NCBI GenBank assembly: GCA_001643675.2
Contig: LSRY02000032.1
Coordinates: 744,001 to 808,000, forward strand
DNA length: 64,000 nucleotides
Origin: Monocercomonoides exilis PA203
Lineage: Eukaryota; Protista; Preaxostyla
Direction of reading: 5' to 3'
Shown: positions 31,194 to 54,295 of the stretch, piece by piece
Position numbering within the stretch: position 1 is the first letter of the stretch
Layout: each line of letters starts with the position of its first letter
Position numbers and translations under genes: made by a program
The notes under the pieces: generated by a model
Database searches by the model: none
The model's input: only the letters and a program-made list of their open reading frames with translations
What the model was told of the DNA's origin: nothing

Positions 31194-31980
31194 GGTTGCA
31201 AGCAAACAAAAGGGAATTGTAATATTTTAAAAGCGCTTTATTCCTTTGAAGAATGAAAGCCACAAAAGGGTCTTTTTACAACATTCTCTTCCTTTCTGTA
31301 GATTTATTAAAAGGCTCATCATTTTTCATTTTTTTAAAATTTTCTTCAGCTTTTATTTTTAATTATCTCGAATATTTATAACCTTTCTTTTCAGTCATTT
31401 CGAAGTATGTTTTTGCTGCCATAGCTAATGGAACAGGGAATGAAATAAATGTGTGTTTTGATTGCAACATTTTCTTTTGAGGATACAAAAACACAAGTTC
31501 TGTGATTATTACGTGTTGTTCAGGAGATGGTTGAGGCAAAAGGATGAGAATCCAGTTGCTCAACAAAAGAAAAAGAAATGCATATACAATACAAACAGAA
31601 ATACAAATAGAAATACAAAAAACATAAACAAAAGGGATAATATAGTTCTTGATACATACACACAAACGAGCAAAAAATGTATGGTTCAATCATCAAGCAA
31701 AACAATGTGCACATTCAAAAGAGAACAACAACAACAACAAAACAAAATCAAACAGGATGCACATTACAAACATATCAAGCGAATGGATTGGAAAGGAAAT
31801 CAATCAAAATGAAATGATATTCTTTATTCTTTGATTTCTCCATTTTGGAATGGAAAATCAACAGCTTCATCAGCCATTCATTCATTTTTGTCTCTTTTTC
31901 CCCCAACAAAATGAAGAATGGCTGAGCCAAATGAAATGAAATAGAATATTTAGTTCCTTTTTATTTTGCACCTTTTTTTC

Positions 31981-34900
31981 CTAATCACCATTCAAGCTCT
32001 GGATGAGGGCGTTGAAGGCAGAGTTCGGGTTGGCGAGGAGGCGTGCCGGCGTGTCCATCTCCTCCACCTGCCCTTGGCTCATCACCATGATCCGGTCGCT
32101 GTGCATGATCGTGTTCAGCCGGTGCGCAATCACAATCACCGTCTGCTCCACAAACACCCGCCGGATCGTGTTCTGGATTTTGGCGTCTGTCTCCACATCC
32201 ACATTCGCGGTCGCCTCGTCCATAATCACAATCTTGCACTTGTTCAGCATCGCCCGCCCGAAGCAGATCAGCTGCCGCTGCCCGGCGCTGAAGTTCGATC
32301 CGCCCTCTGCCATCTGCGTGTCCAGCCCATACTCCAGCCCCGCCACAATCTCCTTCATCTCAATCAGCTCCAGCACCTCCCAGATCTCGTCGTCGCTGCA
32401 CCTGCCCCCGATGTCCAGGTTGTATCTGAGTGTCCCCGTGAACAGAGTGGGATCTTGTGGAATGATCGCAATCGACCGCCGCACTCTCCCCAGACTCACT
32501 TTCGAGATGTCCACCCCGTCGATCAGCACCCGCCCGCTGTTCGGCTCCTCGTTCGGGTCTGCCTCAATCGGAAACCCTGTGCTCACATCAATCATCGTCG
32601 GCTGCAGCGATGGATCCAGCTCCACCAGCCGGAACAGCGCAAACAGCAAAGAAGATTTTCCAGCACCTGTCCGCCCACACACCCCGATCTTCTCCCCTGC
32701 CCGCAGCGAGAACGACACATCCCGCAGCACAAACTGCAGCCCCGGCCGATATCTGAAAGTGACATGCTCATACTCCACTTTCCCTTCTGCCGGCCACTCT
32801 TTCGGCGGCTCAATTGCTCCTCCTTTCTTTGTGTGATCTTTCTCCTGCGGCAGCTGCGTCGAGTAGAACTTGATCCGCTGGTACCCCGTCATCCGCGAGT
32901 CCAGCTCCACATTCTGCTGCACAATCTGCTGCCCCAGCATGCAGAACGTGATCGCCGACGAGATCGCCACCCCCAGCTTCGCCGGCTCCATGTAGAACCA
33001 CCCCAGCACAATCACCCCCACCATCAGCACCGTCGACACCAACGACGACAGCACCGTCGCCCACTTCTGCCCTTCCCGGAACAGCACAAACCGCACATTC
33101 CACTCGTCGTTCAGCCCGTAGAACCGCTCCCTCCACCGCTCCTCCAGGTGGTACGACCGGATCGTCGACAGCCCCGCCCCGCTCACCGTCTCGCTGAACA
33201 CCGACAGCACCGGCGACCGCGACATCGACTCCAGCCGCTGCAGATTCCGCGACGCACGCGAGTAGATGCTCAGGATGACGTAATACACAACAAGCGCCGG
33301 AAGCCCAATCGCCAGGAAGAACACCGTGTCCACCGCCACAATCACCACCTGCCCCACCAGCCCCAGCCACATCGACACCACCTGCAGCAGCTGCGACAGC
33401 AACTGCTGGTCCACCTGCGGCACATCCCCCGTAAACCGGTTCAGGATCCGCCCCATCGGCGTCGTGTCAAAGAACGACGACGGGCAGTGCATCACACTCT
33501 CCAGCAGCTCCTTGTGGATCTTCCTGTTCGACCTGCCCGACATCGGCCGCACAACAGCAGCCCGGATCAGCAGCAGCACCAGCACCCCCGCTGCCAGCAG
33601 CCCGTAGATCCCGATCTTCCACTCGTACGACACAGATGGGTATTGAGACGCCGTCCCAATCACCCCCACCCAGTACGACCCCATCGTTATCGCCCCGTCT
33701 GCCGCCACCATCAGCACCACAAACGGCACAATCCCCCACCCCGGCAGCAGCGACACCAGATACTCCCAGTAGACCTTCAGCGGCACCGACCCTGTCTCCT
33801 GCTCCTCCTCTGTCATCATGTGCTTCCCTGCCTCTGACCCCTCCTCCTCGCTCTCCTCTCCTCCTTTGCTGCTCCCTGCCTTTCCCCGCGCCATCTCCTC
33901 TCTCCTCTTCCTCGACTTCATCCCTGCCGATTTCCCTCCCTTTTTGTGATGATGGCTGCGGTGGTGGTGATGATGATGCTCATCTTTGCCTTCACCACTA
34001 TTTCCCTCCTCTTCATCATTATCGTCCTCGCCATCGTCATCCTCGTCGTTGTCGCTGTGGCTCGATCGGATGATGTACTCGCTGAAGTCGATCCCCCGCT
34101 CCCGCAGCTCCTTCTCCGTCCCTTGCGCTGCAATCCTTCCTCCACCCAGCAGGATGATGTTGTCTGCCCGGTCCAGATACTGCAGCTGGTTCGTCATCAG
34201 CAGCACCGTCTTCCCTCTGCTCTTCAGCGTCCCCACAATGCACTCCTCAAACAGATACCGCCCCACATGCGCATCCACCGCCGACAGCGGGTCGTCCAGG
34301 ATGTAGATGTCTCTGTCCGAGTACACTGCCCGCGCCAGCTGAATGCGCGCCTTCTGCCCGCCACTCAGATTCACCCCTTTCTCCCCAATCTCTGTCTGGT
34401 CCCCTGCCGCAAACAGCTTCAGGTCGCTCTCCAGCGCACACACACGGATCGCCTCCCTGTACTTCTCCTCCTCAAACGCACACCCAAACGTGATGTTCCC
34501 CCGCACCGTGTTGTTGTTGATCCACGCTGTCTGCGCACAGTACGACACCTCCCCATCCACCTCCACCTTCCCGCTCACTTTCTCCGCATCTGCAATGATC
34601 GCCGCCCCCAGCGACGACTTCCCAGACCCCACACCCCCAACCACCATCGTCAGCGTCCCTTTCTTCAGCACCACATTCACATCCCGCAGAACAGGCTCGT
34701 TCTTTCTCCCTTCCGAAGGCGACACAGAAGGCGTGGGTGTTGGGCTGGGCGATGCCGACGAAAACGGTGTGCTGGAGAAGATCGGTGTGGGTGCAAGCGC
34801 AGGAGTAGAAAACACAGAGTGCGGAAGCCCTGGCGTGGCTGCCGGCGACGAAACCCCGTCGCACGAGGCAGTCGTCGGCGTCGGCACAAACACAGACACT

Positions 34901-37249
34901 GCTGCTTTCTCGTTTGAGACACCCATTGAAGCGCCTGCTGGTGCAATTGGAGCGAGCCTCGGCGTTGTCTCTTCCGGCGGAGGCGCATCTGCTGAAGTGC
35001 CAGCAGCTGTCTCAGCAAAGACCGGCGCATACGCAGAATCAGCATCAAACCGAACAACAGACGGCATCTGCGAATTGGATGAAGCCAGCTGTGTCTCCAC
35101 TTCAGCCTCCGAGGCATAAGTCGACTGAGAATATGTTGGCACAGAATATGAAGGCGCGGAGTAAGAAGGCGCAGCAAACGATGGAGACGACGAAGAAGAC
35201 GACGATGATGAAGCAGAAGATGATGCTAACGAGACAACTGCTGTTTGCATCTGCTGCTGGGCTTGTGCCACATCGCTCGCGTTGTTGTTCTCTTCCCTCA
35301 GCCTCTGTGCTGCTTCCTTCTTTTTTTCTGCCATCTTCTTCTTAAGCGCTGCCTGCTCCGACATGGAAAGCGGGATTTCCGGCGGCTCGCCCCATTTGAA
35401 CGTGCCGTTCTCAATCATCAAAGCAACCGTCGGATCGCTTGGTTTGTCCCTCTTCTCGATTTTCAGTTCAGGCAGAACAAGAAAGTCCCGAATTCTCGTT
35501 ATGGACACGTTGATCAGTCCAATCCCCTGGAAAATCATGGGCAGCATTGTCGTCGGCTGCGTCATCAACGTCAAAAACCCCAAATTAGCCATCACATACA
35601 CCGCAAACATGTCTTGCGTAATGTTGTTTGTGAAGATGTACACTGAGAACGTCGCAAGATTCACCAGCTGCGGCGTCACACGCATTATCGCATTCATAAT
35701 CTGCATAATCGTGATCATTGACTTTGCCGAATCTATCTGCTTTCCCCTCGGCTCGTTGATTTTTGCGACAAACGCTTCTTCCAGCCCGGTGTATTTCACT
35801 ACTCTCATCCCTTGGAGTGTTTCGTTCGTAATCTTCGTGCGTGCATCGTTAAGATTAAGATAGCTCTTCATTCTGGCCATCATGATCGTCACACATACAA
35901 TCTATTTAAAATGCAAAAATAAAAAAATGCAAATGTTCGAAAAATTCAAGAAACGTTCAAGAAACATTCGAATAATCATGATTATTACTTCAGAAGAAAG
36001 ATAAGTTTAAAAATTCAAACCTCAACAGGGAGGAGTATGACAATAACAGCCACAGCAACAAGTGTCGAAGCTCCGAAGTCTGCAATCAAGAAGCCGAATG
36101 GCACAAGGATCTGAATTGGAATCCAAAGCATCATCAAAAACATCGGAATCATCTCTGCCACATTCCGCGCATCCGTGGAAATAAGCGTAAGAAGTCTCCC
36201 TGTATCGATGTTGCTCTGCGCTGTGATGTTCAAAAGGAGTGTCTTGCTGTAGATGGCCCCAGTAAATGCTGCACGAATTTGCGCCGCAAAATGGTAAAGC
36301 AGCCGATATCCGCATCCGTCAAGCAGCGCATTCAGAATGGGGCACAGCATCAGTATGATTCCTGTTGCATATGGAAATGTGTTGGATCCAGCCATTCCGT
36401 TTGTTGAGTCATAGATTCCCTTGGATGTCACTGCTTTCAAAACCTCTTTCATCATGATTGGCTGCACCAAATTGAATCCGGTTCTAAAATTACATGTTGA
36501 GGCCCCGTGAAAATAGCAGCGAGTGATTTTCGAAAGGATGAAGGAGAAAAGGAAAATATTCGAAAAAACAAAGATAATTATGGTAATTTTGATTTAAAAA
36601 TGCCTTTAAAAAAAAGACGGCATACGCCAGTAACTGCAGAAAGAGACCAAATACTATTTCTGGAGTGATTAAAGATTTTATGACAGTCCCTGCAAGCGGT
36701 GGAGGCTTTATTTTTTTCATTGTATATCTAGAAAAAAGTTAGTTTGAAAATAAAGGAATTGAAAGCTTACAAGGTTTTAAAGCGAAGCAAACTCTGGATT
36801 TTCAGCTTTCTTTTGCTCTTCTTCAGCCTTCTCTTGCACATATTTTGCGTAAAGAGGCCCCCAGGCAGCAATAAACTTTTTGGAAACATTTGCTGTGTTG
36901 TCCTTTTGATGCACTTCATAAATGTCATCGTCGGAGAGGGGCTTCCGCCGGCACACAAAGGGGAAGAAGAAGCAGAAGAAGAAGTTCCAAAGGCAGAATG
37001 AATTTTCTTCACGATTTTTTAATCTTGTGTATTCCTTTGGCTTTTCTTCGGCAAGGGTGACTTCTCCTTGCAGTTTTTTATCGGCAACGTTCGACTCCAT
37101 TACCGCGTATTTTTCAAGCTCGATGTTCTTTTCCGCTGCTTCGTTTTTTCTTCAAAATTCGGATTTGAATCAGGCTTGTCATTTATATGGTTCAAATCGG
37201 ACCGTAGCTTATAGCTAAGTATCTTAGATATTGTATTGGTATCTGACAT
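31981..37249 (-). CDS. ABCC/MRP-type ABC transporter, left copy; 1-nt deletion near the 5' end relative to the right copy
   Basis: NBD1 GGVGSGKSS / LSGGQKAR / IYILDD; TMD2 FFDTTPMGRILNRF; NBD2 GRTGAGKSS / FSAGQRQL / IMDEAT; three GT-AG introns. T6 at 37144-37149 versus A7 in the right copy shifts the frame before ATG 37100. Confidence 0.92.
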
Positions 37250-37351
37250 ATCGTGTGTTGATTGCTCGATGAAATGAAAATTAATTTGGCCCATATTTTT
37301 GGACTCTTCGGAAATGGCCCATCGGAAAAATGGAAAATTAGTATTATATTA

Positions 37352-37493
37352 ATATGGGTTTAGAATTTTTTTTTTTTTTTTTCGTGGAAAAACATATGTT
37401 TATTCAGAATTAAGACAATGTGAGTATGCACGTGCACATATCTGTGTGATCATCACTTTCGTTAGCTTTTATAAAATAATTATTGCCCCATAT
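37352..37493. mobile_element. Mini ATAT-GGG...CCC-ATAT element containing a T17 tract, upstream of left ABCC copy
   Basis: Termini ATATGGGT and GCCCCATAT. The right end AAAATAATTATTGCCCCATAT resembles the element B end AAAATATTTTGCCCCATAT (6861-6879). Confidence 0.45.
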
Positions 37494-38377
37494 ATAAAAT
37501 TTACAAAAGAATTAAATAGGTGATAATTTTTTTTAAAAAAGAAAATTCAAAATGAAAAAATGGAGCAAAACTGGCTCCGCAAAGAAGTAAAATAGAAAAA
37601 TAAAGCTTGACGAAGAGCAAAATTAACGCAACGCGAGCGAGGATGACAAAGGAACCCAAAGGCGTTAATTATTTCTGAAAAGATGTCAAATATCGCAATG
37701 TGGTCTCCGTGCTGATGAACAAGAAGACACCAGACTGAAATGGGACAAGGAAGAAAAGCAGAAAGAGTTCAATCGGTCTTTGACGAATGCACAGATGATG
37801 ATACAGGCAGAAGATGAAGCAATGAGATTTTTTAGATTTGCATGCTTGTTCGTGCAGAGTCAGTCTTGTTCAGCCAATGACGATAACGAGGGGGATGCTT
37901 CGAAGCGATCCGGCATGCTGATTTTCAGTCTGCGTGGTTGGTTTTTGGGGAGAACGAGTAAAATGGGTTGTATGCTCTGCTGACAAAGAGGCCATCGAAG
38001 CAATTGAATCGGAAAAGTGCGCAGAAACGGAAGTTAGTGTGTTTGACCCAGCAGCAAATAAAATGCGAATATTCGAGGAAGATAAAGGAAGATAGGAGGA
38101 ACGAATGCGGAAAAGATGTTCTGATACCAAGAAGAAAAAGGCAAAGAATCCAAAATGAACAAAGAAGAAGGTGATGAAAATTGGAAGGAGATGACAACTG
38201 CTAATTGGAGAAAGTGAGAGCGGTAAAAGGGAAAATGACGCCATTTGCGCTGAATATGAAATTAAATGTGCAATCAAAACGCAAGCATTTTGATTTACAA
38301 GAAAACATTCATTCACTTTCTTCTCTTCGATCTGAGAGTATCACTTAAGGGTCAGTTACGGCGAATCTGAAGATAGA

Positions 38378-39000
38378 ATGCTCACAAGCTCCCCACTCAG
38401 CACTGGACCCACGTTGAATTCTGCCACATTTTTGATGTCAGATGGAACTCCGGGAGAGATGTTTTCGAGGATGATTTCTCATTCCAGTTCTGAATTTTCC
38501 CAACAGATTCCGGGAGCTTCAGAAGTAAAAGAAAGCCATGACGAGGATAGTTTGCTGTTAGAAAAAAGCTATAAAACAATATTTCTCAGAGATCCGGATT
38601 GCAACTTATGTGATATGGATTTACCAGAAAGATATTTGGTAGATCTTATTATTGACCTGAAGAAAGATGATTTAAGTCCTTTTCTGCCAAAGGCTCCTCC
38701 TGCAGCTTCGAGAACAGATAATTGGATGAACGACACATTGGAAAAGGCAGGCGAGCGAACTGAAGCATTTCTATATCAAGCCATTAAAATTCTGCTTTTC
38801 ACACATGCGAAATTAAAAGAAAAAGATGACGAAAAATGATCAATTGCAGATGCAATTTTATTAGTTTCAGAATCGCTGAAGGAAGCAAGATCAGTATGAA
38901 CTCAAGGAAGATTCGGCTATAGGGCTGCTGCACATATGAAGGAGAGCTCAGCTACCAGTCTTCTTTCTCAAAGGCAATCAGAATTTCTTCAAGAATGGTG
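38378..39000 (+). pseudogene. DIRS gag-like ORF with in-frame stops
   Basis: Frame reads through TGA at 38837 and 38897 (EK*SIADAILL..RSV*TQGRFG); assigned by position upstream of pol. Confidence 0.5.
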
Positions 39001-39369
39001 AAAAACAGAAAAGAGTCAACAATTCAAGCTGCAAACAACGAGCTGGCCTATGAGAAGAAGTTCGATAAGATCCAGAACAATTCCAAACAGAAGATCAGTA
39101 AGCCACAGATTTTTTCAAGAAGCTCCCCGGTTGTCAAGACAACAAGACCAAATCAGGCTGCGACCAAGAGCTTCAGGTTTCGCTTCAAGAAGACAATCAG
39201 GGGAGTGAAAATTCCAATAGAGAAAACGAACAGCATTCAACAGCCCGCAGAAGTCCGACAAGAGAAAATGGTTGGAGGAAGAACTTGTTAATTTCGAGAA
39301 GAATGGGAAAAAATTGGAGGAGCATGAATTATTGGGAAAGGAGTAATCCTTGTATGGAGGAGCAAAGCC

Positions 39370-41150
39370 GTGAAGGAATCACTCAAGAAAACAGGAGTTT
39401 TCAACCCTTTGGAGCATCAGAGTCAAGAAGCCCAACAAGCCTTTTCAGAGATGATCAAGAAGCAGCTGGAAACAAATATCATCAAGCCAATTCACAAGAA
39501 GGATGTGAAGCATTTGAACCCAGTGTTTGTTATCAGAAAGAAAGACGGTGGCTGGAGGCAAATCGTGGATTGTCGAAGACTGAACAATGCAATCAAGACG
39601 ATTTGTTACAAGCAAGAAGACCACAGAACAGTGGAGAAAATTATACAAGAAAAGGATTACGCAGTCACATTGGACTTGAGCCAAGCTTATTATCTAATAA
39701 ACGTCAGCGAAGAATTATCTCCATTCCTTTCGTTCGTTTTCAAAGGAAAATACTACGCTTTCCACGGAATGCCTTTCGGATACAAAGATGCGCCTCGAAC
39801 GTTCACAAAAGTGATAAGAAAAGTTCTGAAATACATGAGGGAGAAATGGAATGAAAGAACAATTGCAAACCTGGACGATATTGTTCTTCTTCATCAAGAC
39901 CAACAGGAACTCAATATGATTGTGGAGAAAACTCTTTCGATGTTCAACAAATTGAGACTATTGGTCAATTCAGAAAAATGTCATTTAATTCCAAGTTAGC
40001 AGTTCAAATTTTTGGGTTTCCAATGGGATACAAATCAGTTTGTTGTACAGATAGAGGAATCGAAGAAAACCGAGCTGATGAAAGAGTGCAAGAAATGGAG
40101 GAGGATTGTCCAGAACAACAGAGTTGTTTTGATAAAGAAGTTTGCCTCGTTGATAGGGAAACTGAATGCAACCAGATTCGTGTCATAAGAAGCCTCCCTG
40201 AATTTGTCACAACTGTTCAAACTCCTAAACAAAGCTTTGAGTCTGAATGGATGGCAAGGAAAAATGCGCGTGAATGCGTCGATTACAAATTGCCTCAGGA
40301 AGTGGAGCGAAAGGCTGAAAGTGAACCAACCAAGGAGATTGAATCCAGTGTTTCGACCAGAAGCAATTCCAACGACAGATGCATCAGGGTTTGCCATTAG
40401 CGCAACACAAAAAGTCAACAATCAAATGCTGGACTTTCACAAACCTCTTCCACCTCCATTCAGAAACCAAAGTTCAAATTACAGAGAGCTATTCGCTATA
40501 AATCAAGCCATCGCGCATTTCCCAAATTCCATTCGAAATCAAGAAATAAGAAATCTGCTTATTTGATCAGACAACACAACAGCAGTTAACAATCTGAATC
40601 AACGGGGAGCGGGTCCGAATCTCAGAACCCTTCTGAAGAAAATATGGAATCAAATCCAAGTGCTGAAAGTTGTTGTGAAAGCTCAACATATTCCCGGAGA
40701 GAGAAACGTCAGAGCTGATGGCCTATCGAGATTGGCAAAAGGAGGAGATTACGAAGTCGAAAAAGAAGAACTCGAAGAGATCACCAATCAGCTTCAGATG
40801 CACATCACACTCGATGCCTTCGCAACAAAAGAAAACACAAAATCAACGAGATGGTGCAGACCAGGAAGCAATTTAAGTCAAGACGGGTTACATATTTTTT
40901 GGAGAAACGAGACAGTTCTTGCGCATCCCCTGATTTCTTTGATTCCAGCAGTTATCCGAAAAGCCATGACGGAGGATGCTAAAGTTATTCTTCTTCTTCC
41001 CGATTGAAAGGGTCAGATATGGGAACCTCTCCCGAACAACACAAATCACATTTCCTTGACATGGAGGAGATCTGTGGTGATTATCAAGGAACGAATATGG
41101 ATGAAGTTAATGAATGAAACTCTCACTTGGGAGATCGAAAATATGTTGAA
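39370..41150 (+). pseudogene. DIRS pol: reverse transcriptase - RNase H - DNA N6-adenine methylase-like, one frame with three in-frame stops
   Basis: RT motifs PVFVIRKKDGGWRQIVDCRRLN, TLDLSQAY, MPFGYKDAPRTF, NLDD (for YLDD), FKFLG; RNase H TTDAS, SSNYREL, *SDNTTA, HIPGERNVRADGLSR; MT LDAFAT..N, AHP, LPD*KGQIW. Stops at 39997, 40564, 41005. Confidence 0.9.
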
Positions 41151-42090
41151 TTAATCTATATGTGTGATTTTTAATGAGATCATAAAATCGTTGCATCGTT
41201 GATCTTTCATGAGTAATTTTTTTTGTTGTTAAAAATTTTCAATTAAAAAATATATTTGAAAATCTGAAGAAAGATCGTTGAAAAACTTGAAAACATGCAA
41301 TTTATCGATGACATTTAATAAAAAAAGTGATTGAAAAAATGTTGTGGTATGCTTGATAATTTAATTTTCTTTTTTCCGTGAAAGTTTATGTATCGGATAA
41401 GAAAAAAGAAAATGAACATTTTCTGCGGAATAGAAAATATTATTTTTCTCAGTTACAAGGTCAGTGACCGCGGGAATTGATGATGGAATTAGGCAAGATG
41501 ATTTTTAAGAAAAGCATCTGGGAAGGAGATGCAGCAATTTGATTGTCGAAAAAATATTTAGATGTTTGTATTTTTTATTGTTCTTGTTTATCTTAAAGAT
41601 GTTTCCATCCATGGACTTCTCAGAGTGCAAGAATCTGATAAATACTGTAAATAGTCATTCCTTTGCTTTTCTGAGGAGAACATCAGAAGGAAGGTGGATT
41701 CCGAGATACAACCAGCAAATGAGAATTGAAGATTTTCTGTATTCAATTGGGAGAGGGGATGAAAATAAATTCAATTTAAAAGCATTTGGAAGAGAGGGGA
41801 AATTGAAGAAGAATGCCAACAATTGGACAGTTATTGGAAAGAATAAAATTTGGAGATATTTTTCAGAAAAGAAGTTGATGAAAACATCAAAAGCAGAATA
41901 TTTATGAGGGAATAAAGAAAGATGGAGAAAGGAACGCTGGGAAACAATGGAAAAGGAGAATGGCAGCATCAGTGATTGGGCAATCTTCTGCTTATGCAAT
42001 AGGGAGGGTGTATGTGTTCTTTTGAGGAATTTTTATAATCAATGCAACACTAATTATTTTTAATTATATATTTTTATTTCCATTACAATC

Positions 42091-44973: not shown

Positions 44974-45743
44974 TAAAGCATTTGCTCCTTTTAAAAAATT
45001 CTTTGAAAGAAAACGAGTGTAATTAGAAAAAGATGAACAAAAAAGAAAAAGGAAAATAACCTCAACAAAAAGATGCGATTCATGATTTGATTCAAAAAAT
45101 GATATTTATCATTTTGAGTTTTTGATTTCAAACCTTTTGATGTTTTAATTGCAGATAATATTTGTTTTTAAATAAAATATATGTAATCAATTAATTTGTT
45201 CGAATATTTGATAATAGTTTTTCATTCATACGTATCATTGCTTCTATATTTTCATAACTATTAACTTTCAAAAAATTATACAGGATTAACGATTTTTCAC
45301 CTTTTCGTATTTTCAACTCATTGAAATGTTGAAATGTTTATAATTATTCAAAAATTCAAAATTTCTATTCAAATTAATGAAACAAAAAAGGTCAATATTT
45401 ATGAAAATAATTGTTTGACACAAATTACAACTGAAAGATAATTTTTTAAAACAAAAATGAAAAGTTAGTTAATAGTTTATGTAATAACGATCTTATTGAA
45501 ACTTAAAATTCGTTGATATGTGAAATAAACACAAATGTGGAATTAACAAAAATGAATGATGGAAACAAAATGATCAATTTTGATTTTTTGTGGGACAAAA
45601 TTTTTGTTGTGGAGTTTTTCAAAAAAAACACACATTTGTTATTCAAAATATAATTATATTTCAATAAATAACTTTTTTTTACCAATTCCATCTATCATAT
45701 TTGAAGAGTCGATTTTAATGATCCCATAAAAAATCACCCATAT

Positions 45744-46960
45744 CTGAATAGGAAGATTTGTGGTGGAACGAGATTTTGTCCTCAAGACACATATGACATG
45801 AACTGGCCGAAGAGTGCAAAAACAGCATTGCAAGTGCCACATGGATGGGATACACTTATGGTTTCGCACATTTCAAAGACCGATGGGATAAGTTGAAATA
45901 CAAAGACATCCCTTCAAAATTTCAAATTTGGCAAAAAAGATACTTGGATGTGTTTGTCGCTTTAAAAAACAACGGAATGAAAGCTTCTTCATTGAGAATT
46001 GTCAGATCTGCCATTTCTTTCCTAACATCAGTATTATACGGAAAATCACTTGGAGAGAACACCTTGATCTCAATCCTGTTTTGATCATTCAGGAGATCGG
46101 AATGCAGAAAGAAAAAGAGACAAGATGATATGTGGAACCCTCATCAACTCTTCACATATATAGAAACGATTGGAAAGAACGAAAATATGACATTCTCACA
46201 GCTAACGAGGAAAACAAATTGTTTGTGTATGATGTTTTTTGCTTGCCGCTATTCGGTGCTGGAAAGAATCGGTCTCAAGGAATCAGAAATAGATAAGCAA
46301 TCAATAAACCTGAATCCATCACTGAAAACTGGACTTGAAAGAAGCAATATTGTCATCCCATTTCTCAGCAAGGAAAGTTTAATATATCCAGCAACAGCCG
46401 TTAAAGATCTATGGGATCGAGTGAAAATTCACAATCCTGCTTCTAAAAAACAATTTCTGAGCTCTTCAATATATGATCCAATGAAGGCCCGAGCAATTCG
46501 AAAAGATGCAAGCGAAATGATGAAAGATGCAAGAATCCCTTCGAACTTCAGCTCATACACCTTGAAACATACCACTATATCAGCCTTAACAATGGCGGGA
46601 ACTCCAGTCGAACAGGTGGCAAAATTCGCAAGATAATCCCCCAGAAGCAACACAGTGATTAAACATTATTTCAAATCCAACATATCAAACAAGATGGCAC
46701 AGATTATATCGTCCAATCAGGAGACAAAGAAAGCAACTCAACAGCCTTCCACGGTTCCTCCATCCACAACTGCACCAGACAATAATGATTCCATTATTCC
46801 CATAAATCAACAATCACATTTGCCAGAAGGATATGAAACAGAGAAAGCAAGAGAAGAGATTTCACAACCAGACCGTATCGAAGAACCAGATGATAGTGAG
46901 TATCAATCTATCCACGAAAAGCAATCATATACCACAAACATTGAAAACGAGAAAGACTAA
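45744..46960 (+). pseudogene. DIRS tyrosine recombinase, one frame with in-frame stops
   Basis: SIASATWMGY (N-domain), ACRYS (Arg), SLKTG (Lys), YPATAV, YTLKH (box II), FAR*SPRSNTVIKHY (Tyr). ORFs at 45845, 46130 and 46655 share a frame; stops at 45749, 45794, 46082, 46634. Confidence 0.85.
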
Positions 46961-47924
46961 AATGAAATCATCTAAGAAAAATGCATCCAGTTTATTATTC
47001 GAACAAGATCACATAGACGAAAAGAAATGATGTAAAGAAAAAATTCAGAAAGAAATCCATAACGCCCAATTCCTCCAAACTCTCAGATCAAAGAGAAGAA
47101 AGTGAATGAATGTTTTCTTGTAAATCAAAATGCTTGCGTTTTGATTGCACATTTAATTTCATATTCAGCGCAAATGGCGTCATTTTCCCTTTTACCGCTC
47201 TCACTTTCTCCAATTAGCAGTTGTCATCTCCTTCCAATTTTCATCACCTTCTTCTTTGTTCATTTTGGATTCTTTGCCTTTTTCTTCTTGGTATCAGAAC
47301 ATCTTTTCCGCATTCGTTCCTCCTATCTTCCTTTATCTTCCTCGAATATTCGCATTTTATTTGCTGCTGGGTCAAACACACTAACTTCCGTTTCTGCGCA
47401 CTTTTCCGATTCAATTGCTTCGATGGCCTCTTTGTCAGCAGAGCATACAACCCATTTTACTCGTTCTCCCCAAAAACCAACCACGCAGACTGAAAATCAG
47501 CATGCCGGATCGCTTCGAAGCATCCCCCTCGTTATCGTCATTGGCTGAACAAGACTGACTCTGCACGAACAAGCATGCAAATCTAAAAAATCTCATTGCT
47601 TCATCTTCTGCCTGTATCATCATCTGTGCATTCGTCAAAGACCGATTGAACTCTTTCTGCTTTTCTTCCTTGTCCCATTTCAGTCTGGTGTCTTCTTGTT
47701 CATCAGCACGGAGACCACATTGCGATATTTGACATCTTTTCAGAAATAATTAACGCCTTTGGGTTCCTTTGTCATCCTCGCTCGCGTTGCGTTAATTTTG
47801 CTCTTCGTCAAGCTTTATTTTTCTATTTTACTTCTTTGCGGAGCCAGTTTTGCTCCATTTTTTCATTTTGAATTTTCTTTTTTAAAAAAAATTATCACCT
47901 ATTTAATTCTTTTGTAAATTTTAT

Positions 47925-48033
47925 ATATGGGGCAATAATTATTTTATAAAAGCTAACGAAAGTGATGATCACACAGATATGTGCACGTGCATACTCACAT
48001 TGTCTTAATTCTGAATAAACATATGTTTTTCCA

Positions 48034-48098
<65 letters not shown>

Positions 48099-48110
48099 CT
48101 AAACCCATAT
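47925..48110. mobile_element. Mirror copy of the mini ATAT element, containing A62 (48035-48096)
   Basis: Termini ATATGGGGC and ACCCATAT around the poly(A) run. Confidence 0.45.
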
Positions 48111-48212
48111 TAATATAATACTAATTTTCCATTTTTCCGATGGGCCATTTCCGAAGAGTCCAAAAATATGGGCCAAATTAATTTTCATTTCATCGAGCAA
48201 TCAACACACGAT

Positions 48213-51200
48213 ATGTCAGATACCAATACAATATCTAAGATACTTAGCTATAAGCTACGGTCCGATTTGAACCATATAAATGACAAGCCTGATTCAAATC
48301 CGAATTTTGAAGAAAAAAACGAAGCAGCGGAAAAGAACATCGAGCTTGAAAAATACGCGGTAATGGAGTCGAACGTTGCCGATAAAAAACTGCAAGGAGA
48401 AGTCACCCTTGCCGAAGAAAAGCCAAAGGAATACACAAGATTAAAAAATCGTGAAGAAAATTCATTCTGCCTTTGGAACTTCTTCTTCTGCTTCTTCTTC
48501 CCCTTTGTGTGCCGGCGGAAGCCCCTCTCCGACGATGACATTTATGAAGTGCATCAAAAGGACAACACAGCAAATGTTTCCAAAAAGTTTATTGCTGCCT
48601 GGGGGCCTCTTTACGCAAAATATGTGCAAGAGAAGGCTGAAGAAGAGCAAAAGAAAGCTGAAAATCCAGAGTTTGCTTCGCTTTAAAACCTTGTAAGCTT
48701 TCAATTCCTTTATTTTCAAACTAACTTTTTTCTAGATATACAATGAAAAAAATAAAGCCTCCACCGCTTGCAGGGACTGTCATAAAATCTTTAATCACTC
48801 CAGAAATAGTATTTGGTCTCTTTCTGCAGTTACTGGCGTATGCCGTCTTTTTTTTAAAGGCATTTTTAAATCAAAATTACCATAATTATCTTTGTTTTTT
48901 CGAATATTTTCCTTTTCTCCTTCATCCTTTCGAAAATCACTCGCTGCTATTTTCACGGGGCCTCAACATGTAATTTTAGAACCGGATTCAATTTGGTGCA
49001 GCCAATCATGATGAAAGAGGTTTTGAAAGCAGTGACATCCAAGGGAATCTATGACTCAACAAACGGAATGGCTGGATCCAACACATTTCCATATGCAACA
49101 GGAATCATACTGATGCTGTGCCCCATTCTGAATGCGCTGCTTGACGGATGCGGATATCGGCTGCTTTACCATTTTGCGGCGCAAATTCGTGCAGCATTTA
49201 CTGGGGCCATCTACAGCAAGACACTCCTTTTGAACATCACAGCGCAGAGCAACATCGATACAGGGAGACTTCTTACGCTTATTTCCACGGATGCGCGGAA
49301 TGTGGCAGAGATGATTCCGATGTTTTTGATGATGCTTTGGATTCCAATTCAGATCCTTGTGCCATTCGGCTTCTTGATTGCAGACTTCGGAGCTTCGACA
49401 CTTGTTGCTGTGGCTGTTATTGTCATACTCCTCCCTGTTGAGGTTTGAATTTTTAAACTTATCTTTCTTCTGAAGTAATAATCATGATTATTCGAATGTT
49501 TCTTGAACGTTTCTTGAATTTTTCGAACATTTGCATTTTTTTATTTTTGCATTTTAAATAGATTGTATGTGTGACGATCATGATGGCCAGAATGAAGAGC
49601 TATCTTAATCTTAACGATGCACGCACGAAGATTACGAACGAAACACTCCAAGGGATGAGAGTAGTGAAATACACCGGGCTGGAAGAAGCGTTTGTCGCAA
49701 AAATCAACGAGCCGAGGGGAAAGCAGATAGATTCGGCAAAGTCAATGATCACGATTATGCAGATTATGAATGCGATAATGCGTGTGACGCCGCAGCTGGT
49801 GAATCTTGCGACGTTCTCAGTGTACATCTTCACAAACAACATTACGCAAGACATGTTTGCGGTGTATGTGATGGCTAATTTGGGGTTTTTGACGTTGATG
49901 ACGCAGCCGACGACAATGCTGCCCATGATTTTCCAGGGGATTGGACTGATCAACGTGTCCATAACGAGAATTCGGGACTTTCTTGTTCTGCCTGAACTGA
50001 AAATCGAGAAGAGGGACAAACCAAGCGATCCGACGGTTGCTTTGATGATTGAGAACGGCACGTTCAAATGGGGCGAGCCGCCGGAAATCCCGCTTTCCAT
50101 GTCGGAGCAGGCAGCGCTTAAGAAGAAGATGGCAGAAAAAAAGAAGGAAGCAGCACAGAGGCTGAGGGAAGAGAACAACAACGCGAGCGATGTGGCACAA
50201 GCCCAGCAGCAGATGCAAACAGCAGTTGTCTCGTTAGCATCATCTTCTGCTTCATCATCGTCGTCTTCTTCGTCGTCTCCATCGTTTGCTGCGCCTTCTT
50301 ACTCCGCGCCTTCATATTCTGTGCCAACATATTCTCAGTCGACTTATGCCTCGGAGGCTGAAGTGGAGACACAGCTGGCTTCATCCAATTCGCAGATGCC
50401 GTCTGTTGTTCGGTTTGATGCTGATTCTGCGTATGCGCCGGTCTTTGCTGAGACAGCTGCTGGCACTTCAGCAGATGCGCCTCCGCCGGAAGAGACAACG
50501 CCGAGGCTCGCTCCAATTGCACCAGCAGGCGCTTCAATGGGTGTCTCAAACGAGAAAGCAGCAGTGTCTGTGTTTGTGCCGACGCCGACGACTGCCTCGT
50601 GCGACGGGGTTTCGTCGCCGGCAGCCACGCCAGGGCTTCCGCACTCTGTGTTTTCTACTCCTGCGCTTGCACCCACACCGATCTTCTCCAGCACACCGTT
50701 TTCGTCGGCATCGCCCAGCCCAACACCCACGCCTTCTGTGTCGCCTTCGGAAGGGAGAAAGAACGAGCCTGTTCTGCGGGATGTGAATGTGGTGCTGAAG
50801 AAAGGGACGCTGACGATGGTGGTTGGGGGTGTGGGGTCTGGGAAGTCGTCGCTGGGGGCGGCGATCATTGCAGATGCGGAGAAAGTGAGCGGGAAGGTGG
50901 AGGTGGATGGGGAGGTGTCGTACTGTGCGCAGACAGCGTGGATCAACAACAACACGGTGCGGGGGAACATCACGTTTGGGTGTGCGTTTGAGGAGGAGAA
51001 GTACAGGGAGGCGATCCGTGTGTGTGCGCTGGAGAGCGACCTGAAGCTGTTTGCGGCAGGGGACCAGACAGAGATTGGGGAGAAAGGGGTGAATCTGAGT
51101 GGCGGGCAGAAGGCGCGCATTCAGCTGGCGCGGGCAGTGTACTCGGACAGAGACATCTACATCCTGGACGACCCGCTGTCGGCGGTGGATGCGCATGTGG

Positions 51201-53482
51201 GGCGGTATCTGTTTGAGGAGTGCATTGTGGGGACGCTGAAGAGCAGAGGGAAGACGGTGCTGCTGATGACGAACCAGCTGCAGTATCTGGACCGGGCAGA
51301 CAACATCATCCTGCTGGGTGGAGGAAGGATTGCAGCGCAAGGGACGGAGAAGGAGCTGCGGGAGCGGGGGATCGACTTCAGCGAGTACATCATCCGATCG
51401 AGCCACAGCGACAACGACGAGGATGACGATGGCGAGGACGATAATGATGAAGAGGAGGGAAATAGTGGTGAAGGCAAAGATGAGCATCATCATCACCACC
51501 ACCGCAGCCATCATCACAAAAAGGGAGGGAAATCGGCAGGGATGAAGTCGAGGAAGAGGAGAGAGGAGATGGCGCGGGGAAAGGCAGGGAGCAGCAAAGG
51601 AGGAGAGGAGAGCGAGGAGGAGGGGTCAGAGGCAGGGAAGCACATGATGACAGAGGAGGAGCAGGAGACAGGGTCGGTGCCGCTGAAGGTCTACTGGGAG
51701 TATCTGGTGTCGCTGCTGCCGGGGTGGGGGATTGTGCCGTTTGTGGTGCTGATGGTGGCGGCAGACGGGGCGATAACGATGGGGTCGTACTGGGTGGGGG
51801 TGATTGGGACGGCGTCTCAATACCCATCTGTGTCGTACGAGTGGAAGATCGGGATCTACGGGCTGCTGGCAGCGGGGGTGCTGGTGCTGCTGCTGATCCG
51901 GGCTGCTGTTGTGCGGCCGATGTCGGGCAGGTCGAACAGGAAGATCCACAAGGAGCTGCTGGAGAGTGTGATGCACTGCCCGTCGTCGTTCTTTGACACG
52001 ACGCCGATGGGGCGGATCCTGAACCGGTTTACGGGGGATGTGCCGCAGGTGGACCAGCAGTTGCTGTCGCAGCTGCTGCAGGTGGTGTCGATGTGGCTGG
52101 GGCTGGTGGGGCAGGTGGTGATTGTGGCGGTGGACACGGTGTTCTTCCTGGCGATTGGGCTTCCGGCGCTTGTTGTGTATTACGTCATCCTGAGCATCTA
52201 CTCGCGTGCGTCGCGGAATCTGCAGCGGCTGGAGTCGATGTCGCGGTCGCCGGTGCTGTCGGTGTTCAGCGAGACGGTGAGCGGGGCGGGGCTGTCGACG
52301 ATCCGGTCGTACCACCTGGAGGAGCGGTGGAGGGAGCGGTTCTACGGGCTGAACGACGAGTGGAATGTGCGGTTTGTGCTGTTCCGGGAAGGGCAGAAGT
52401 GGGCGACGGTGCTGTCGTCGTTGGTGTCGACGGTGCTGATGGTGGGGGTGATTGTGCTGGGGTGGTTCTACATGGAGCCGGCGAAGCTGGGGGTGGCGAT
52501 CTCGTCGGCGATCACGTTCTGCATGCTGGGGCAGCAGATTGTGCAGCAGAATGTGGAGCTGGACTCGCGGATGACAGGCTATCAGCGGATCAAGTTCTAC
52601 TCGACGCAGCTGCCGCAGGAGAAAGATCACACAAAGAAAGAAGGAGCAATTGAGCCGCCGAAAGAGTGGCCGGCAGAAGGGAAGGTGGAGTATGAGCATG
52701 TCACTTTCAGATATCGGCCGGGGCTGCCGTTTGTGCTGCGGGATGTGTCGTTCTCGCTGCGGGCAGGGGAGAAGATCGGGGTGTGTGGGCGGACAGGTGC
52801 TGGGAAATCTTCTTTGCTGTTTGCGCTGTTCCGGCTGGTGGAGCTGGATCCGTCGCTGCAGCCGACGATGATTGATGTGAGCACAGGGTTTCCGATTGAG
52901 GCAGACCCGAACGAGGAGCCGAACAGCGGGCGGGTGCTGATCGACGGGGTGGACATCTCGAAAGTGAGTCTGGGGAGAGTGCGGCGGTCGATTGCGATCA
53001 TTCCACAAGATCCCACTCTGTTCACGGGGACACTCAGATACAACCTGGACATCGGGGGCAGGTGCAGCGACGACGAGATCTGGGAGGTGCTGGTGCTGAT
53101 TGAGATGAAGGAGATTGTGGCGGGGCTGGAGTATGGGCTGGACACGCAGATGGCAGAGGGCGGGTCGAACTTCAGCGCCGGGCAGCGGCAGCTGATCTGC
53201 TTCGGGCGGGCGATGCTGAACAAGTGCAAGATTGTGATTATGGACGAGGCGACCGCGAATGTGGATGTGGAGACAGACGCCAAAATCCAGAACACGATCC
53301 GGCGGGTGTTTGTGGAGCAGACGGTGATTGTGATTGCGCACCGGCTGAACACGATCATGCACAGCGACCGGATCATGGTGATGAGCCAAGGGCAGGTGGA
53401 GGAGATGGACACGCCGGCACGCCTCCTCGCCAACCCGAACTCTGCCTTCAACGCCCTCATCCAGAGCTTGAATGGTGATTAG
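48213..53482 (+). CDS. ABCC/MRP-type ABC transporter (TMD1-NBD1-TMD2-NBD2, no TMD0), right copy, intact
   Basis: Same motifs as the left copy; lasso-like EENSFCLWNFFFCFF..RKPLSDDDIY; introns ~48671-48735, ~48838-48978, ~49444-49561. Start could be 48168 or 48213. Confidence 0.94.
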
Positions 53483-54295
53483 GAAAAAAAGGTGCAAAAT
53501 AAAAAGGAACTAAATATTCTATTTCATTTCATTTGGCTCAGCCATTCTTCATTTTGTTGGGGGAAAAAGAGACAAAAATGAATGAATGGCTGATGAAGCT
53601 GTTGATTTTCCATTCCAAAATGGAGAAATCAAAGAATAAAGAATATCATTTCATTTTGATTGATTTCCTTTCCAATCCATTCGCTTGATATGTTTGTAAT
53701 GTGCATCCTGTTTGATTTTGTTTTGTTGTTGTTGTTGTTCTCTTTTGAATGTGCACATTGTTTTGCTTGATGATTGAACCATACATTTTTTGCTCGTTTG
53801 TGTGTATGTATCAAGAACTATATTATCCCTTTTGTTTATGTTTTTTGTATTTCTATTTGTATTTCTGTTTGTATTGTATATGCATTTCTTTTTCTTTTGT
53901 TGAGCAACTGGATTCTCATCCTTTTGCCTCAACCATCTCCTGAACAACACGTAATAATCACAGAACTTGTGTTTTTGTATCCTCAAAAGAAAATGTTGCA
54001 ATCAAAACACACATTTATTTCATTCCCTGTTCCATTAGCTATGGCAGCCAAAACATACTTCGAAATGACTGAAAAGAAAGGTTATAAATATTCGAGATAA
54101 GAAACTGAATTAAAGTGAAGTGGTAAATAATAATGAAATGTTTTCATCAATTTAATATTGTTATGCTCTAATATTATGCAGTTAAATGAAAAAGCAAATC
54201 TTGCTTTTTTTTTAGTTTTTCTAAGAATCAAAAATTGTTTTTTATTTCCATAAAATGTACGGAACAATTGCAAAACTTTAAAATGCACCATTTCT

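What the first reader, a model, noticed from the sequence alone, without database searches (positions are those of the whole stretch)
31363..54100. 22.7-kb palindrome: two ABCC transporter genes mirrored around a dead DIRS retrotransposon
Seen: arms 31363-38339 and 47079-54100 are reverse complements, with only about a dozen substitutions and two homopolymer length differences found by eye. Their inner ends abut the DIRS coding core closely on both sides, and there is no target-site duplication at the outer ends. Known: DIRS elements have inverted terminal repeats and make no TSD, but their ITRs are normally hundreds of bp, not 7 kb. Inference: either the ITRs were extended outward to copy a whole flanking host gene (template switch or conversion primed in the ITR), or a transporter became ITR cargo. 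The core is heavily decayed while the arms are near-identical, so the duplication post-dates the element's death or is kept uniform by arm-to-arm conversion. This would be a retroelement-seeded route to efflux-pump amplification.
Basis: partly seen in the sequence, partly recalled or inferred. Interest (0 to 1): 0.85.

Follow-up and report, generated by a model that had tools for sequence, protein, structure and literature searches.

The report
Retrotransposon-primed mirror duplication of a transporter gene
A real 22.7-kb mirror-image duplication in the protist Monocercomonoides exilis carries two complete ABCC efflux-pump genes, and its junctions suggest that a short inverted repeat inside a dead DIRS retrotransposon primed the copying of the neighbouring host gene.

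Summary
Arms 31363-38339 and 47079-54100 are reverse complements with 13 substitutions and 2 homopolymer indels. Each arm holds a complete four-exon ABCC (MRP-type) gene, and both genes are transcribed outward.

More than 20 other genomic copies define a 4572-bp DIRS1-like family with 88-nt ITRs and an internal complementary region (ICR). Only the inner 68 nt of each arm is DIRS sequence. On the left it is the true left terminus. On the right it is the left half of the ICR, not the right ITR.

The window copy stops exactly at the ICR midpoint and lacks its last 276 bp. The left arm is therefore the original and the right arm is the copy.

The best reading is that a 3' end in the ICR annealed to the element's own left terminus. 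Synthesis then ran 6.9 kb into host DNA and rejoined at 54100|54101.

Short-read contigs support two copies: a graph branch exactly at 54100, about 2x depth there, and both arm variants present. Ten of the 13 substitutions cluster in 589 bp, which suggests arm-to-arm gene conversion elsewhere.

This is a new variant of inverted-repeat-primed palindrome formation. I verified a second ABCC palindrome centred on a transposon (a MITE on contig C10). Other first-stage notes of this scan report further transposon-centred palindromes in the same genome, some centred on DIRS elements; I did not check those.

The parts
31363..38271 (.). Left arm, host part (the original copy). It holds 618 bp of 3' flank, the whole ABCC gene and 1171 bp of 5' flank.
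   Evidence: It is contiguous with unique left flank and joins the DIRS at the element's canonical first base.
31981..37100 (-). ABCC (MRP-type) gene, left copy. Four coding exons: 37100-36789, 36729-36625, 36482-36018, 35901-31981. 1597 aa, equal to KAH7820854.1.
   Evidence: tblastn of P0001. Pfam finds 2x ABC_membrane and 2x ABC_tran. Best PDB matches are ABCC3, ABCC2 and MRP1. Cluster look-up.
38272..38339 (+). DIRS left terminus: the first 68 nt of the 88-nt left ITR. It forms the inner end of the left arm.
   Evidence: More than 20 family copies start at this base. It is complementary to 47079-47146 with 1 mismatch.
38272..41160 (+). DIRS1-like element, 5' part (gag, RT, RNase H, methyltransferase-like). 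Family positions 1-2891, 92% identical to other copies, with many premature stops.
   Evidence: Pfam RVT_1.
41161..45737 (.). Nested 4.6-kb insertion with imperfect terminal inverted repeats of about 20 nt and a 4-5-nt target duplication. It is absent from all other DIRS copies.
   Evidence: Also noted by another first-stage reader (s1-464480).
45738..47147 (+). DIRS1-like element, 3' part (tyrosine recombinase), family positions 2887-4296. It ends at the midpoint of the ICR, so the last 276 bp (right ICR half and right ITR) are missing.
   Evidence: Pfam Phage_integrase.
47079..47147 (+). Left half of the internal complementary region (lICR), the inner end of the right arm. Junction J1 (47147|47148) joins it directly to inverted host DNA.
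   Evidence: Four-way alignment A1. Other copies continue with rICR and tail, while the window switches to the reverse complement of the left host flank.
47148..54100 (.). Right arm, host part (the derived inverted copy).
   Evidence: It is joined to an internal DIRS position rather than to a terminus.
48363..53482 (+). ABCC gene, right copy (KAH7820859.1). It is intact and differs by 3 amino acids in the large exon.
54100..54101 (.). Outer novel junction J2, between the right arm and unique right flank.
   Evidence: In one search, an X1 contig of depth 209 ends exactly at 54100. A contig of depth 99 runs from 54071 into the flank.
52576..53164 (.). 589-bp patch holding 10 of the 13 arm differences (equal to 32299-32887 on the left arm).
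   Evidence: Both variants are seen in short-read contigs.

Best explanation
This is a genuine chromosomal inverted duplication in Monocercomonoides exilis (contig C28). A DIRS1-like retrotransposon had inserted 1.17 kb upstream of an ABCC gene. Like all DIRS1-type elements it carries, near its 3' end, an internal complementary region whose left half is the exact reverse complement of the element's first 68 nt. After a break or stalled fork at or beyond the element's 3' end, a 3' DNA end lying in that left ICR half annealed to the left terminus, either by fold-back on the same strand or by invasion of the sister chromatid. The new strand was rejoined to the right-hand chromosome at 54100|54101, which removed the element's last 276 bp. 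Since then the two arms have been kept almost identical by arm-to-arm gene conversion, except for one 589-bp patch. Shown: the structure, the junction positions, the existence of two copies and the intact coding capacity of both genes. Inferred: the priming event, its direction, the second joining step and the conversion.
For: (1) The family has a 4572-bp structure: ITR-L 1-88, ITR-R 4501-4572, lICR 4228-4295 as the reverse complement of 1-68, and rICR 4294-4330 as the reverse complement of 4532-4568. The two ICR halves overlap by 2-3 nt, like the 'circular junction' described for DIRS1-like elements (PMC3266345, PMC7192593).
(2) The window copy begins at family position 1 and ends at 4296. 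It then continues without a gap as the reverse complement of the left host flank.
(3) It was the only copy found that ends at that position.
(4) The arm sequence exists only twice in the genome, so it is not mobile cargo.
(5) Short-read contigs show a two-copy boundary. In run X1 a contig of depth 209 ends exactly at 54100, and a contig of depth 99 starts 30 nt (k-1) inside the arm and continues into the flank. Left-arm and right-arm letters at the variant sites both occur across runs.
(6) The differences are 7 synonymous and 3 non-synonymous, with derived states in both arms. Ten of the 13 differences lie in 589 bp (scan permutation p<5e-6), and a 4495-bp run has none.
(7) A second ABCC palindrome on C10 (about 6.3-kb arms) is centred on a foldback MITE of about 1.08 kb that occurs as ordinary separate copies elsewhere.
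(8) Fold-back priming at short inverted repeats near a break is an established route to inverted duplications (PMC10622511).
Against: J1 (47147|47148) rests on the ONT/Canu assembly alone. The 68-nt repeat is longer than the 31-mers of the available contigs, so short-read contigs cannot phase it, and no raw long reads were available. The contig across J2 has 30 letters on the arm side, one short of the tool's own bridging criterion. Contig depth over the GC-rich coding part of the arm is only about 1-1.4x that of the flank. I attribute this to base composition but could not calibrate it. No pre-duplication allele is available, so the original right flank, the size of the deletion and any microhomology at J2 are unknown. 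An interstitial outcome needs a second switch or end-joining step for which there is no direct evidence. The substitution cluster could have another cause than escape from conversion.
Confidence: 0.7

Rival explanations
1. The join was made by the element's tyrosine recombinase, not by homology-primed synthesis. The ICR is an inverted copy of the circle junction, the presumed recombination site. Site-specific recombination between it and the host/left-terminus junction on the sister chromatid would join ICR position 4295/6 to inverted host flank. A second break and rejoining would then make the duplication interstitial.
For: The breakpoint coincides with the lICR/rICR boundary, the 'circular junction' (PMC3266345). 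Another copy (C12:312439-313363) has the segment between rICR and the right ITR end flipped, as inversion between such sites would give.
Against: The same sequence results from any crossover or priming within the 68-nt homology, so the breakpoint does not discriminate between the two routes. This copy's own recombinase frame has 14 stops, so the enzyme would have to act in trans. The route produces a dicentric or acentric intermediate and needs an extra unrelated event to end after 6.9 kb. The C10 palindrome has the same geometry around a MITE that has no recombinase.
Confidence: 0.12
2. Assembly artefact. Only one ABCC copy exists, and Canu mis-joined haplotypes or chimeric (fold-back) ONT reads into a false palindrome.
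For: The inner junction J1 is supported only by the ONT assembly. Arm divergence of about 0.2% is in the range of allelic variation. The authors note that multi-copy regions were polished less well (PMC8767320). Depth over the coding part of the arm is under 2x.
Against: Fold-back chimeric reads give spacer-less perfect palindromes, not an 8.7-kb asymmetric spacer with a junction inside a 68-nt natural repeat. Illumina-derived contigs show a branch exactly at the outer arm boundary, with 2.1x depth on the arm side. They also carry both variant sets. Alleles of one locus could not have two different outer flanks. The differences show a purifying-selection pattern of 7 synonymous to 3 non-synonymous. 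ONT coverage was about 150x with N50 8.9 kb. Both genes are in the public annotation.
Confidence: 0.05
3. A head-to-head ABCC palindrome already existed. The DIRS later inserted at its centre and lost its 3' end by deletion.
For: The genome is rich in palindromes (unchecked notes), and palindrome centres might attract insertions.
Against: This needs an insertion exactly on the symmetry axis, followed by a deletion that removes exactly family positions 4297-4572 and not one host base. The arm homology runs seamlessly through the 68-nt DIRS repeat, which this scenario leaves as coincidence.
Confidence: 0.04
4. The ABCC gene is cargo of a giant DIRS derivative with 7-kb ITRs that transposes as a unit.
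For: The inverted arms flank a retroelement core, and there is no target-site duplication at the outer ends, as expected for DIRS.
Against: The arm occurs only at this locus. All other family copies end at 38272-equivalent positions with 88-nt ITRs. The right ITR and half of the ICR, which is essential for DIRS-1 retrotransposition (PMC7192593), are missing. Both arms keep the introns of the ABCC gene.
Confidence: 0.01

Closest known systems
Short-inverted-repeat / fold-back-primed palindrome formation after a double-strand break. Described in Tetrahymena rDNA, yeast and mammalian amplicons; yeast genetics in Al-Zain et al. 2023 (PMC10622511). The Tetrahymena and mammalian cases are cited from my own knowledge.
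   Same: A short pre-existing inverted repeat (here 68 nt) lies at the centre, and the segment between the repeats survives as the non-palindromic spacer. The arms start exactly at the repeat, and sequence distal to the repeat on one side is lost.
   Different: The seeding repeat is the functional terminus/ICR pair of a DIRS retrotransposon. The loop is very long, 4.2 kb or 8.7 kb with the nested insertion. The product is a 6.9-kb interstitial duplication rather than a hairpin-capped or dicentric chromosome, so a second switch or end-joining must be assumed.
DUP-TRP/INV-DUP and related replication-based rearrangements in human genomic disorders. These involve two template switches, the first through inverted repeats and the second by microhomology or end joining. 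Cited from my own knowledge.
   Same: Both give an interstitial inverted duplication with one junction inside an inverted repeat pair and a second junction without obvious homology.
   Different: There is no triplicated segment here. The repeat is a 68-nt transposon feature rather than low-copy repeats of kilobase size.
Leishmania amplification of the ABCC gene MRPA on linear amplicons, formed at inverted repeats that are largely SIDER retroposon-derived (Ubeda et al. 2014, PMC4028189).
   Same: In both, retroelement-derived inverted repeats mediate inverted duplication of an ABCC/MRP efflux gene in a protist.
   Different: The Leishmania products are extrachromosomal, stochastic and selected by drug. 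Here the duplication is fixed in the chromosome with continuity to both flanks and exists as two copies. No link to drug selection is known.
Sex-chromosome palindromes of primates maintained by arm-to-arm gene conversion. Cited from my own knowledge.
   Same: Both have near-identical multi-kb arms around a unique spacer, carry intact genes and have very unevenly distributed differences.
   Different: The scale is smaller (7 kb against tens of kb to Mb) and the organism is different. Conversion is only inferred from one genome. The origin is traceable to a transposon repeat, which is generally not the case for the sex-chromosome palindromes.
Canonical DIRS1-like retrotransposons (Dictyostelium DIRS-1; Piednoel et al. 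2011, PMC3266345; Malicki et al. 2020, PMC7192593).
   Same: The M. exilis family has a gag-like ORF, an RT-RNaseH-methyltransferase-like ORF, an overlapping tyrosine-recombinase ORF, short ITRs, and adjacent left and right ICRs complementary to the two termini.
   Different: The window copy is a truncated, stop-riddled remnant. In the life cycle the ICR-terminus annealing is proposed to act on cDNA to rebuild the element's ends. Here the same complementarity appears to have acted on chromosomal DNA and copied host sequence.

Membership tests
DIRS1-like tyrosine-recombinase retrotransposon (family level, tested on copy L031) | RT, RNase H and methyltransferase-like domains in that order in one ORF | tested here: met
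   RVT_1 scores E 1e-30. RT_RNaseH_2 (3e-6) and Dam-like (1.4e-3) are weak and below Pfam cut-offs, but lie in the expected order.
DIRS1-like tyrosine-recombinase retrotransposon (family level, tested on copy L031) | Tyrosine recombinase encoded by the 3' part of an ORF that overlaps pol, plus a gag-like first ORF | tested here: met
   A 1065-aa ORF has Phage_integrase at residues 776-922 (E 9e-6, just under the Pfam cut-off). A 280-aa first ORF has no Pfam match.
DIRS1-like tyrosine-recombinase retrotransposon (family level, tested on copy L031) | [quoted passage not shown] | tested here: met
   1-68 pairs with 4295-4228 (100%), 4532-4568 pairs with 4330-4294 (100%) and 28-88 pairs with 4562-4501 (93.5%). 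The definition is taken from PMC3266345.
DIRS1-like retrotransposon (the window copy itself) | Complete element with both ITRs and a full ICR | tested here: not met
   The copy ends at family position 4296, so rICR and the right ITR are absent. Searches find 23 premature stops and a nested insertion. It is a truncated remnant of the family, not a functional member.
ABCC (MRP/CFTR/SUR) subfamily of ABC transporters | Full transporter with two transmembrane domains and two nucleotide-binding domains | tested here: met
   ABC_membrane x2 and ABC_tran x2 (three stretches reported).
ABCC (MRP/CFTR/SUR) subfamily of ABC transporters | Closest characterised relatives are ABCC proteins rather than ABCB or ABCG | tested here: met
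   the best PDB matches are ABCC3, ABCC2, MRP1, ABCC4 and YCF1 (E 1e-180 to 4e-203); relatives are named MRP/ABCC. The substrate and direction of transport were not tested.
Inverted-repeat-primed (fold-back) palindromic duplication | A pre-existing short inverted repeat at the centre, with arms beginning exactly at it | tested here: met
   The 68-nt pair is a standard feature of every intact family copy, and host arms follow with no intervening base.
Inverted-repeat-primed (fold-back) palindromic duplication | Loss of the sequence distal to the repeat on the side of the break | tested here: met
   The terminal 276 bp of the element are missing, and no remnant lies beyond J2.
Inverted-repeat-primed (fold-back) palindromic duplication | Break, hairpin or template-switch intermediate | not testable with these tools
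   This needs experiments or population data. No pre-duplication allele was available.
Palindrome maintained by arm-to-arm gene conversion | Arm divergence far below that expected from age, with heterogeneous tracts | tested here: inconclusive
   1.7% divergence in a 589-bp patch against 0.047% elsewhere (p<5e-6); derived states occur in both arms. The age of the duplication is not known independently.

The most novel reading that the evidence does not exclude
In Monocercomonoides exilis, inverted repeats carried by transposons act as general seeds of fold-back duplication. Candidates are DIRS terminus/ICR pairs, foldback MITEs and the long TIRs of DNA transposons. The result would be a genome-wide population of giant palindromes that serve as a principal route of gene-family expansion, including ABCC pumps and receptor families. 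These palindromes would then be homogenised by arm-to-arm conversion. The DIRS ICR, a device for rebuilding the element's own ends, would then double as a built-in primer for host gene duplication.
Probability: 0.45. Interest if true: 0.75.

Novelty: new variant of a known kind. Interest (0 to 1): 0.6.

Why it matters
The junctions preserve an unusually readable record of how a natural palindrome arose. The copy is joined to an internal transposon position that is complementary to the element's own end, and the element's 3' end is gone. That assigns a direction (left arm original, right arm copy) and a priming site, which is rarely possible for natural palindromes.

It also shows a cost or side-effect of the DIRS replication design: the ICR can act on chromosomal DNA. 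It gives a concrete route by which a complete, expressed efflux-pump gene was doubled. I found two further near-identical inverted ABCC pairs in the same genome, one of them centred on a MITE.

The published genome paper mentions neither palindromes nor DIRS elements, so this feature of the amitochondriate model protist appears undescribed. In 2011 the presence of structurally complete DIRS1-like elements in excavates was still considered uncertain.

Tried and rejected
1. Testing J1 with reads. All available runs are Logan k=31 contigs, and the 68-nt repeat exceeds k, so J1 cannot be phased.

2. Depth as copy number. Contig depth is about 2.1x in the AT-rich outer arm (X1) and about 2x overall in X2. 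It is only 1-1.4x over the GC-rich exon in X1 and X4. I treat it as compatible with two copies but not decisive.

3. Source of the 10 clustered differences in a paralogue. The closest paralogues (C26, 86-89% identical in this part) would introduce far more differences. Only the three non-synonymous sites could be polarised.

4. Remnants of the DIRS tail beyond J2. A word-size-7 BLAST found nothing significant.

5. Other copies of this DIRS family ending at the ICR midpoint. None was found among the scored matches. Copies ending at 4268-4281 look like ICR-less deletion derivatives, which is a different thing.

6. The C17 inverted DIRS pair. The fetched pieces did not cover comparable parts, so there is no result.

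7. RNA-mediated origin. A read-in transcript, reverse transcription and ICR fold-back would leave the host part as an unpaired 3' tail that cannot prime. It would also need re-integration at the same site, and both arms keep introns and promoter. Rejected on reasoning.

8. The mirror scenario, with the right arm original and the left arm the copy. It needs a prior truncation of the DIRS at exactly position 4296. Rejected as unparsimonious.
Full report
OBSERVATION. The inverted repeat is real and sits at the stated coordinates. The repeat finder reports three collinear inverted blocks that cover 31363-38339 and 47079-54100. BLAST and MAFFT of the arms give 99.8% identity with 13 substitutions. 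There is one 1-nt indel and one 44-nt difference in a homopolymer, about 17-18 T on the left against 62 A at 48035-48096. Homology stops abruptly at both outer ends. The arm occurs only twice in the 82.3-Mb assembly.

ORGANISM AND GENES. The large ORF in each arm is 100% or 99.8% identical to a 1597-aa 'putative MRP' of Monocercomonoides exilis. The assembly statistics, 101 contigs and 82.3 Mb, match the ONT assembly of strain PA203 (PMC8767320). The window is C28:744001-808000.

The gene has four coding exons, at 37100-36789, 36729-36625, 36482-36018 and 35901-31981 on the minus strand, mirrored at 48363-53482. It has two ABC_membrane and two ABC_tran domains. Its best solved relatives are ABCC3, ABCC2, MRP1, ABCC4 and YCF1.

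The two genes lie head to head and are transcribed outward. Each arm also holds 1171 bp upstream and 618 bp downstream of the gene, so a complete transcription unit was duplicated. Both copies are in the public annotation, as KAH7820854.1 and KAH7820859.1. The old 454 assembly had a single partial model.

THE CENTRAL ELEMENT. A search of the own genome with 36000-39500 found more than 20 loci, 85-92% identical, that all begin at window 38272. Eight fetched copies define a 4572-bp family.

Self-comparison of one copy (L031) gives the canonical DIRS1-type layout:
- left ITR at 1-88 and right ITR at 4501-4572;
- a left ICR (4228-4295) that is the perfect reverse complement of positions 1-68;
- immediately next to it, with a 2-3-nt overlap, a right ICR (4294-4330) that is the reverse complement of the right end (4532-4568).

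This is the 'lITR-lICR-rICR-rITR' arrangement with a circular junction described by Piednoel et al. (PMC3266345) and by Malicki et al. (PMC7192593). Malicki et al. showed experimentally that the ICR is essential for DIRS-1 retrotransposition.

That copy has a 280-aa first ORF. It also has an ORF with RT, RNase H-like and Dam-like methyltransferase matches, and an overlapping 1065-aa ORF with a tyrosine-recombinase domain.

The window copy corresponds to family positions 1-2891 (38272-41160) and 2887-4296 (45738-47147). The two parts are separated by a 4.6-kb nested insertion with short imperfect TIRs and a 4-5-nt target duplication. It is 92% identical to L031, with almost no indels. It carries 4, 14 and 5 premature stops in the gag, recombinase and RT frames.

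THE KEY ANATOMY. The window copy ends at family position 4296, exactly between the left and right ICR halves. It lacks the last 276 bp: the right ICR, the interval and the right ITR.

The four-way alignment shows the following. Upstream of the 68-nt block, the right junction follows the DIRS recombinase/ICR sequence like every other copy. After the block, the other copies continue with the right ICR. The window instead continues, base for base, as the reverse complement of the host DNA left of the element.

So the inner 68 nt of the two arms are the element's left terminus and its left ICR. These form a natural inverted repeat present in every intact copy, and the remaining 6909 nt of each arm is host DNA. 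The left junction (host|position 1) is the ordinary insertion boundary shared with all copies. The right junction (position 4296|inverted host) is abnormal. The left arm is therefore the original and the right arm the copy.

MECHANISM (inferred). The simplest route is a single sequence of events:
- a break or collapsed fork occurred at or beyond the element's 3' end;
- a 3' end lying in the left ICR was exposed;
- that end annealed to the complementary left terminus, on the same strand (fold-back) or on the sister chromatid;
- the non-homologous tail was trimmed;
- the new strand was released and joined to the other side at 54100|54101.

This is the established inverted-repeat-primed route to inverted duplications (for yeast, PMC10622511). 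It differs in that the primer is a DIRS cis-element and that the product is interstitial, which needs a second switch or an end-joining step. Because homology ends where the element ends, any event within the 68 nt gives the same product. A recombinase-catalysed exchange at the circle-junction mimic therefore cannot be excluded from sequence alone.

IS IT AN ASSEMBLY ARTEFACT? All public runs were available only as Logan contigs. I laid four runs on 51100-57000.

In run X1 a 781-nt contig of depth 209 ends exactly at 54100. A 4841-nt contig of depth 99 begins at 54071 and continues into the right flank. That is the signature of a de Bruijn branch at the boundary of a two-copy repeat, with a 2.1:1 depth ratio. 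The overlap is 30 nt, which is k-1 and one letter short of the tool's bridging rule, so I report it as such.

At the variant sites, X1 carries left-arm letters and X2 carries right-arm letters. X4 and the RNA run X5 carry mixtures. The differences are therefore real and both versions exist in the culture.

Depth over the GC-rich exon is only 1-1.4x the flank in X1 and X4 and about 2x in X2. I could not calibrate composition bias, so depth is compatible with two copies but not decisive. J1 cannot be phased with 31-mers.

A fold-back-read artefact would give a spacer-less perfect palindrome, not an 8.7-kb asymmetric spacer with a junction in a natural 68-nt repeat. ONT coverage was about 150x with N50 8.9 kb.

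ARM DIFFERENCES. Ten of the 13 substitutions lie in 589 bp of the last exon, at 32299-32887 on the left and 52576-53164 on the right. The next 4495 bp, which include introns and promoter, have none. A scan permutation test gives p<5e-6, with divergence of 1.7% inside the patch against 0.047% outside.

Inside the patch, 7 changes are synonymous and 3 are not. At sites conserved in paralogues, the left arm is derived at residue 1053 and the right arm at residue 1175. Both copies have therefore diverged under purifying selection.

The pattern fits an older duplication whose arms are homogenised by arm-to-arm conversion except for one patch. A mutational cluster laid down during the copying synthesis fits less well, because derived states occur in both arms.

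The 68-nt pair differs at only one position. This is fewer than expected if the element's 8% divergence arose after insertion. However, a defective lineage with conserved cis-signals would look the same, so the relative timing of element death and duplication stays open.

CONTEXT. The same own-genome searches revealed other near-identical inverted ABCC pairs.

On C10, 959865-972616 is a 12.75-kb near-perfect palindrome with about 6.3-kb arms and a loop of about 120 nt. Its centre is a foldback MITE of about 1.08 kb. The MITE's ends match dozens of separate copies elsewhere at 88-97% identity, and these appear as ordinary inverted-repeat pairs. This is the same geometry as in the window, with a different transposon.

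On C43, arms 568374-578774 and 595429-605820 flank a 16.6-kb spacer.

First-stage notes of this scan list 310 'palindrome' entries for this genome. They include axes that are MITEs, a Merlin transposon and DIRS elements. These notes are unchecked leads, not evidence. The genome paper mentions neither palindromes nor DIRS.

VERDICT. The feature is a new variant of a known kind, an inverted-repeat-primed palindromic duplication seeded by the terminus/ICR pair of a DIRS retrotransposon. It doubled a complete ABCC gene.

The main open points are direct long-read support for J1, the pre-duplication allele, and whether this is a general mechanism in the genome.

Noticed in passing
G000:C10:959865-972616 (loci L039, L044): A 12.75-kb near-perfect palindrome with about 6.3-kb arms, 2 substitutions and 2 indels, and a loop of about 120 nt. 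The arms carry an ABCC paralogue tail to tail. Its centre (about 965699-966782) is a foldback MITE of about 1.08 kb that occurs as many separate copies elsewhere in the genome.
   Followed up: partly
G000:C43:568374-578774 and 595429-605820 (loci L040, L041, L045-L048): A third inverted ABCC pair. The arms are at least 10.4 kb and 99.8% identical, but the innermost 570 nt or so are only 90% identical, around a 16.6-kb non-palindromic spacer. This may be a layered or mosaic palindrome.
   Followed up: partly
G000:C17:761499-765382 (-) and 811923-815806 (+): Two DIRS copies in inverted orientation about 46 kb apart give identical bit scores in two searches. They may lie in the arms of another large inverted duplication.
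   Followed up: no
G000:C12:312439-313363: [quoted passage not shown] This is an inversion between the 37-nt inverted repeats, so the element's short repeats recombine in other ways too.
   Followed up: no
G000: C91:1471464, C91:1042306, C17 (two copies), C37:192560, C27:865340, C48:556922, C37:824844: About eight DIRS copies whose match stops at family position 4268-4281. They look like ICR-less deletion derivatives formed between the direct repeats 4228-4268 and 4521-4562.
   Followed up: no
window 41161-45737: A nested 4.6-kb insertion inside the DIRS methyltransferase-like region. It has imperfect TIRs of about 20 nt, a 4-5-nt target duplication, and two long ORFs (42605-43915 and 43918-44973) without Pfam matches. 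Its terminal motif resembles the ends of the C10 foldback MITE, which suggests one DNA-transposon family.
   Followed up: partly
L031:2250-6821 and more than 20 other loci: A structurally complete DIRS1-like family (ITRs, left and right ICR, gag, RT-RH-MT, YR) in a metamonad. The 2011 overview of DIRS1-like elements still regarded their presence in Excavata as uncertain (PMC3266345), and the M. exilis genome paper lists no DIRS.
   Followed up: partly
window 37366-37382 and 48035-48096: The homopolymer in the ABCC 5' flank is about 17-18 T in the left arm and 62 A in the right arm. This could be a real length difference or an ONT homopolymer error, and it lies in the presumed promoter region.
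   Followed up: no
window 54950-55040: A GAA/GAG-rich stretch inside the 900-aa ORF of the right flank attracts contigs from many loci. Depth there reaches 3000 in X1, with many false joints. It is a low-complexity coding repeat, not a rearrangement.
   Followed up: no
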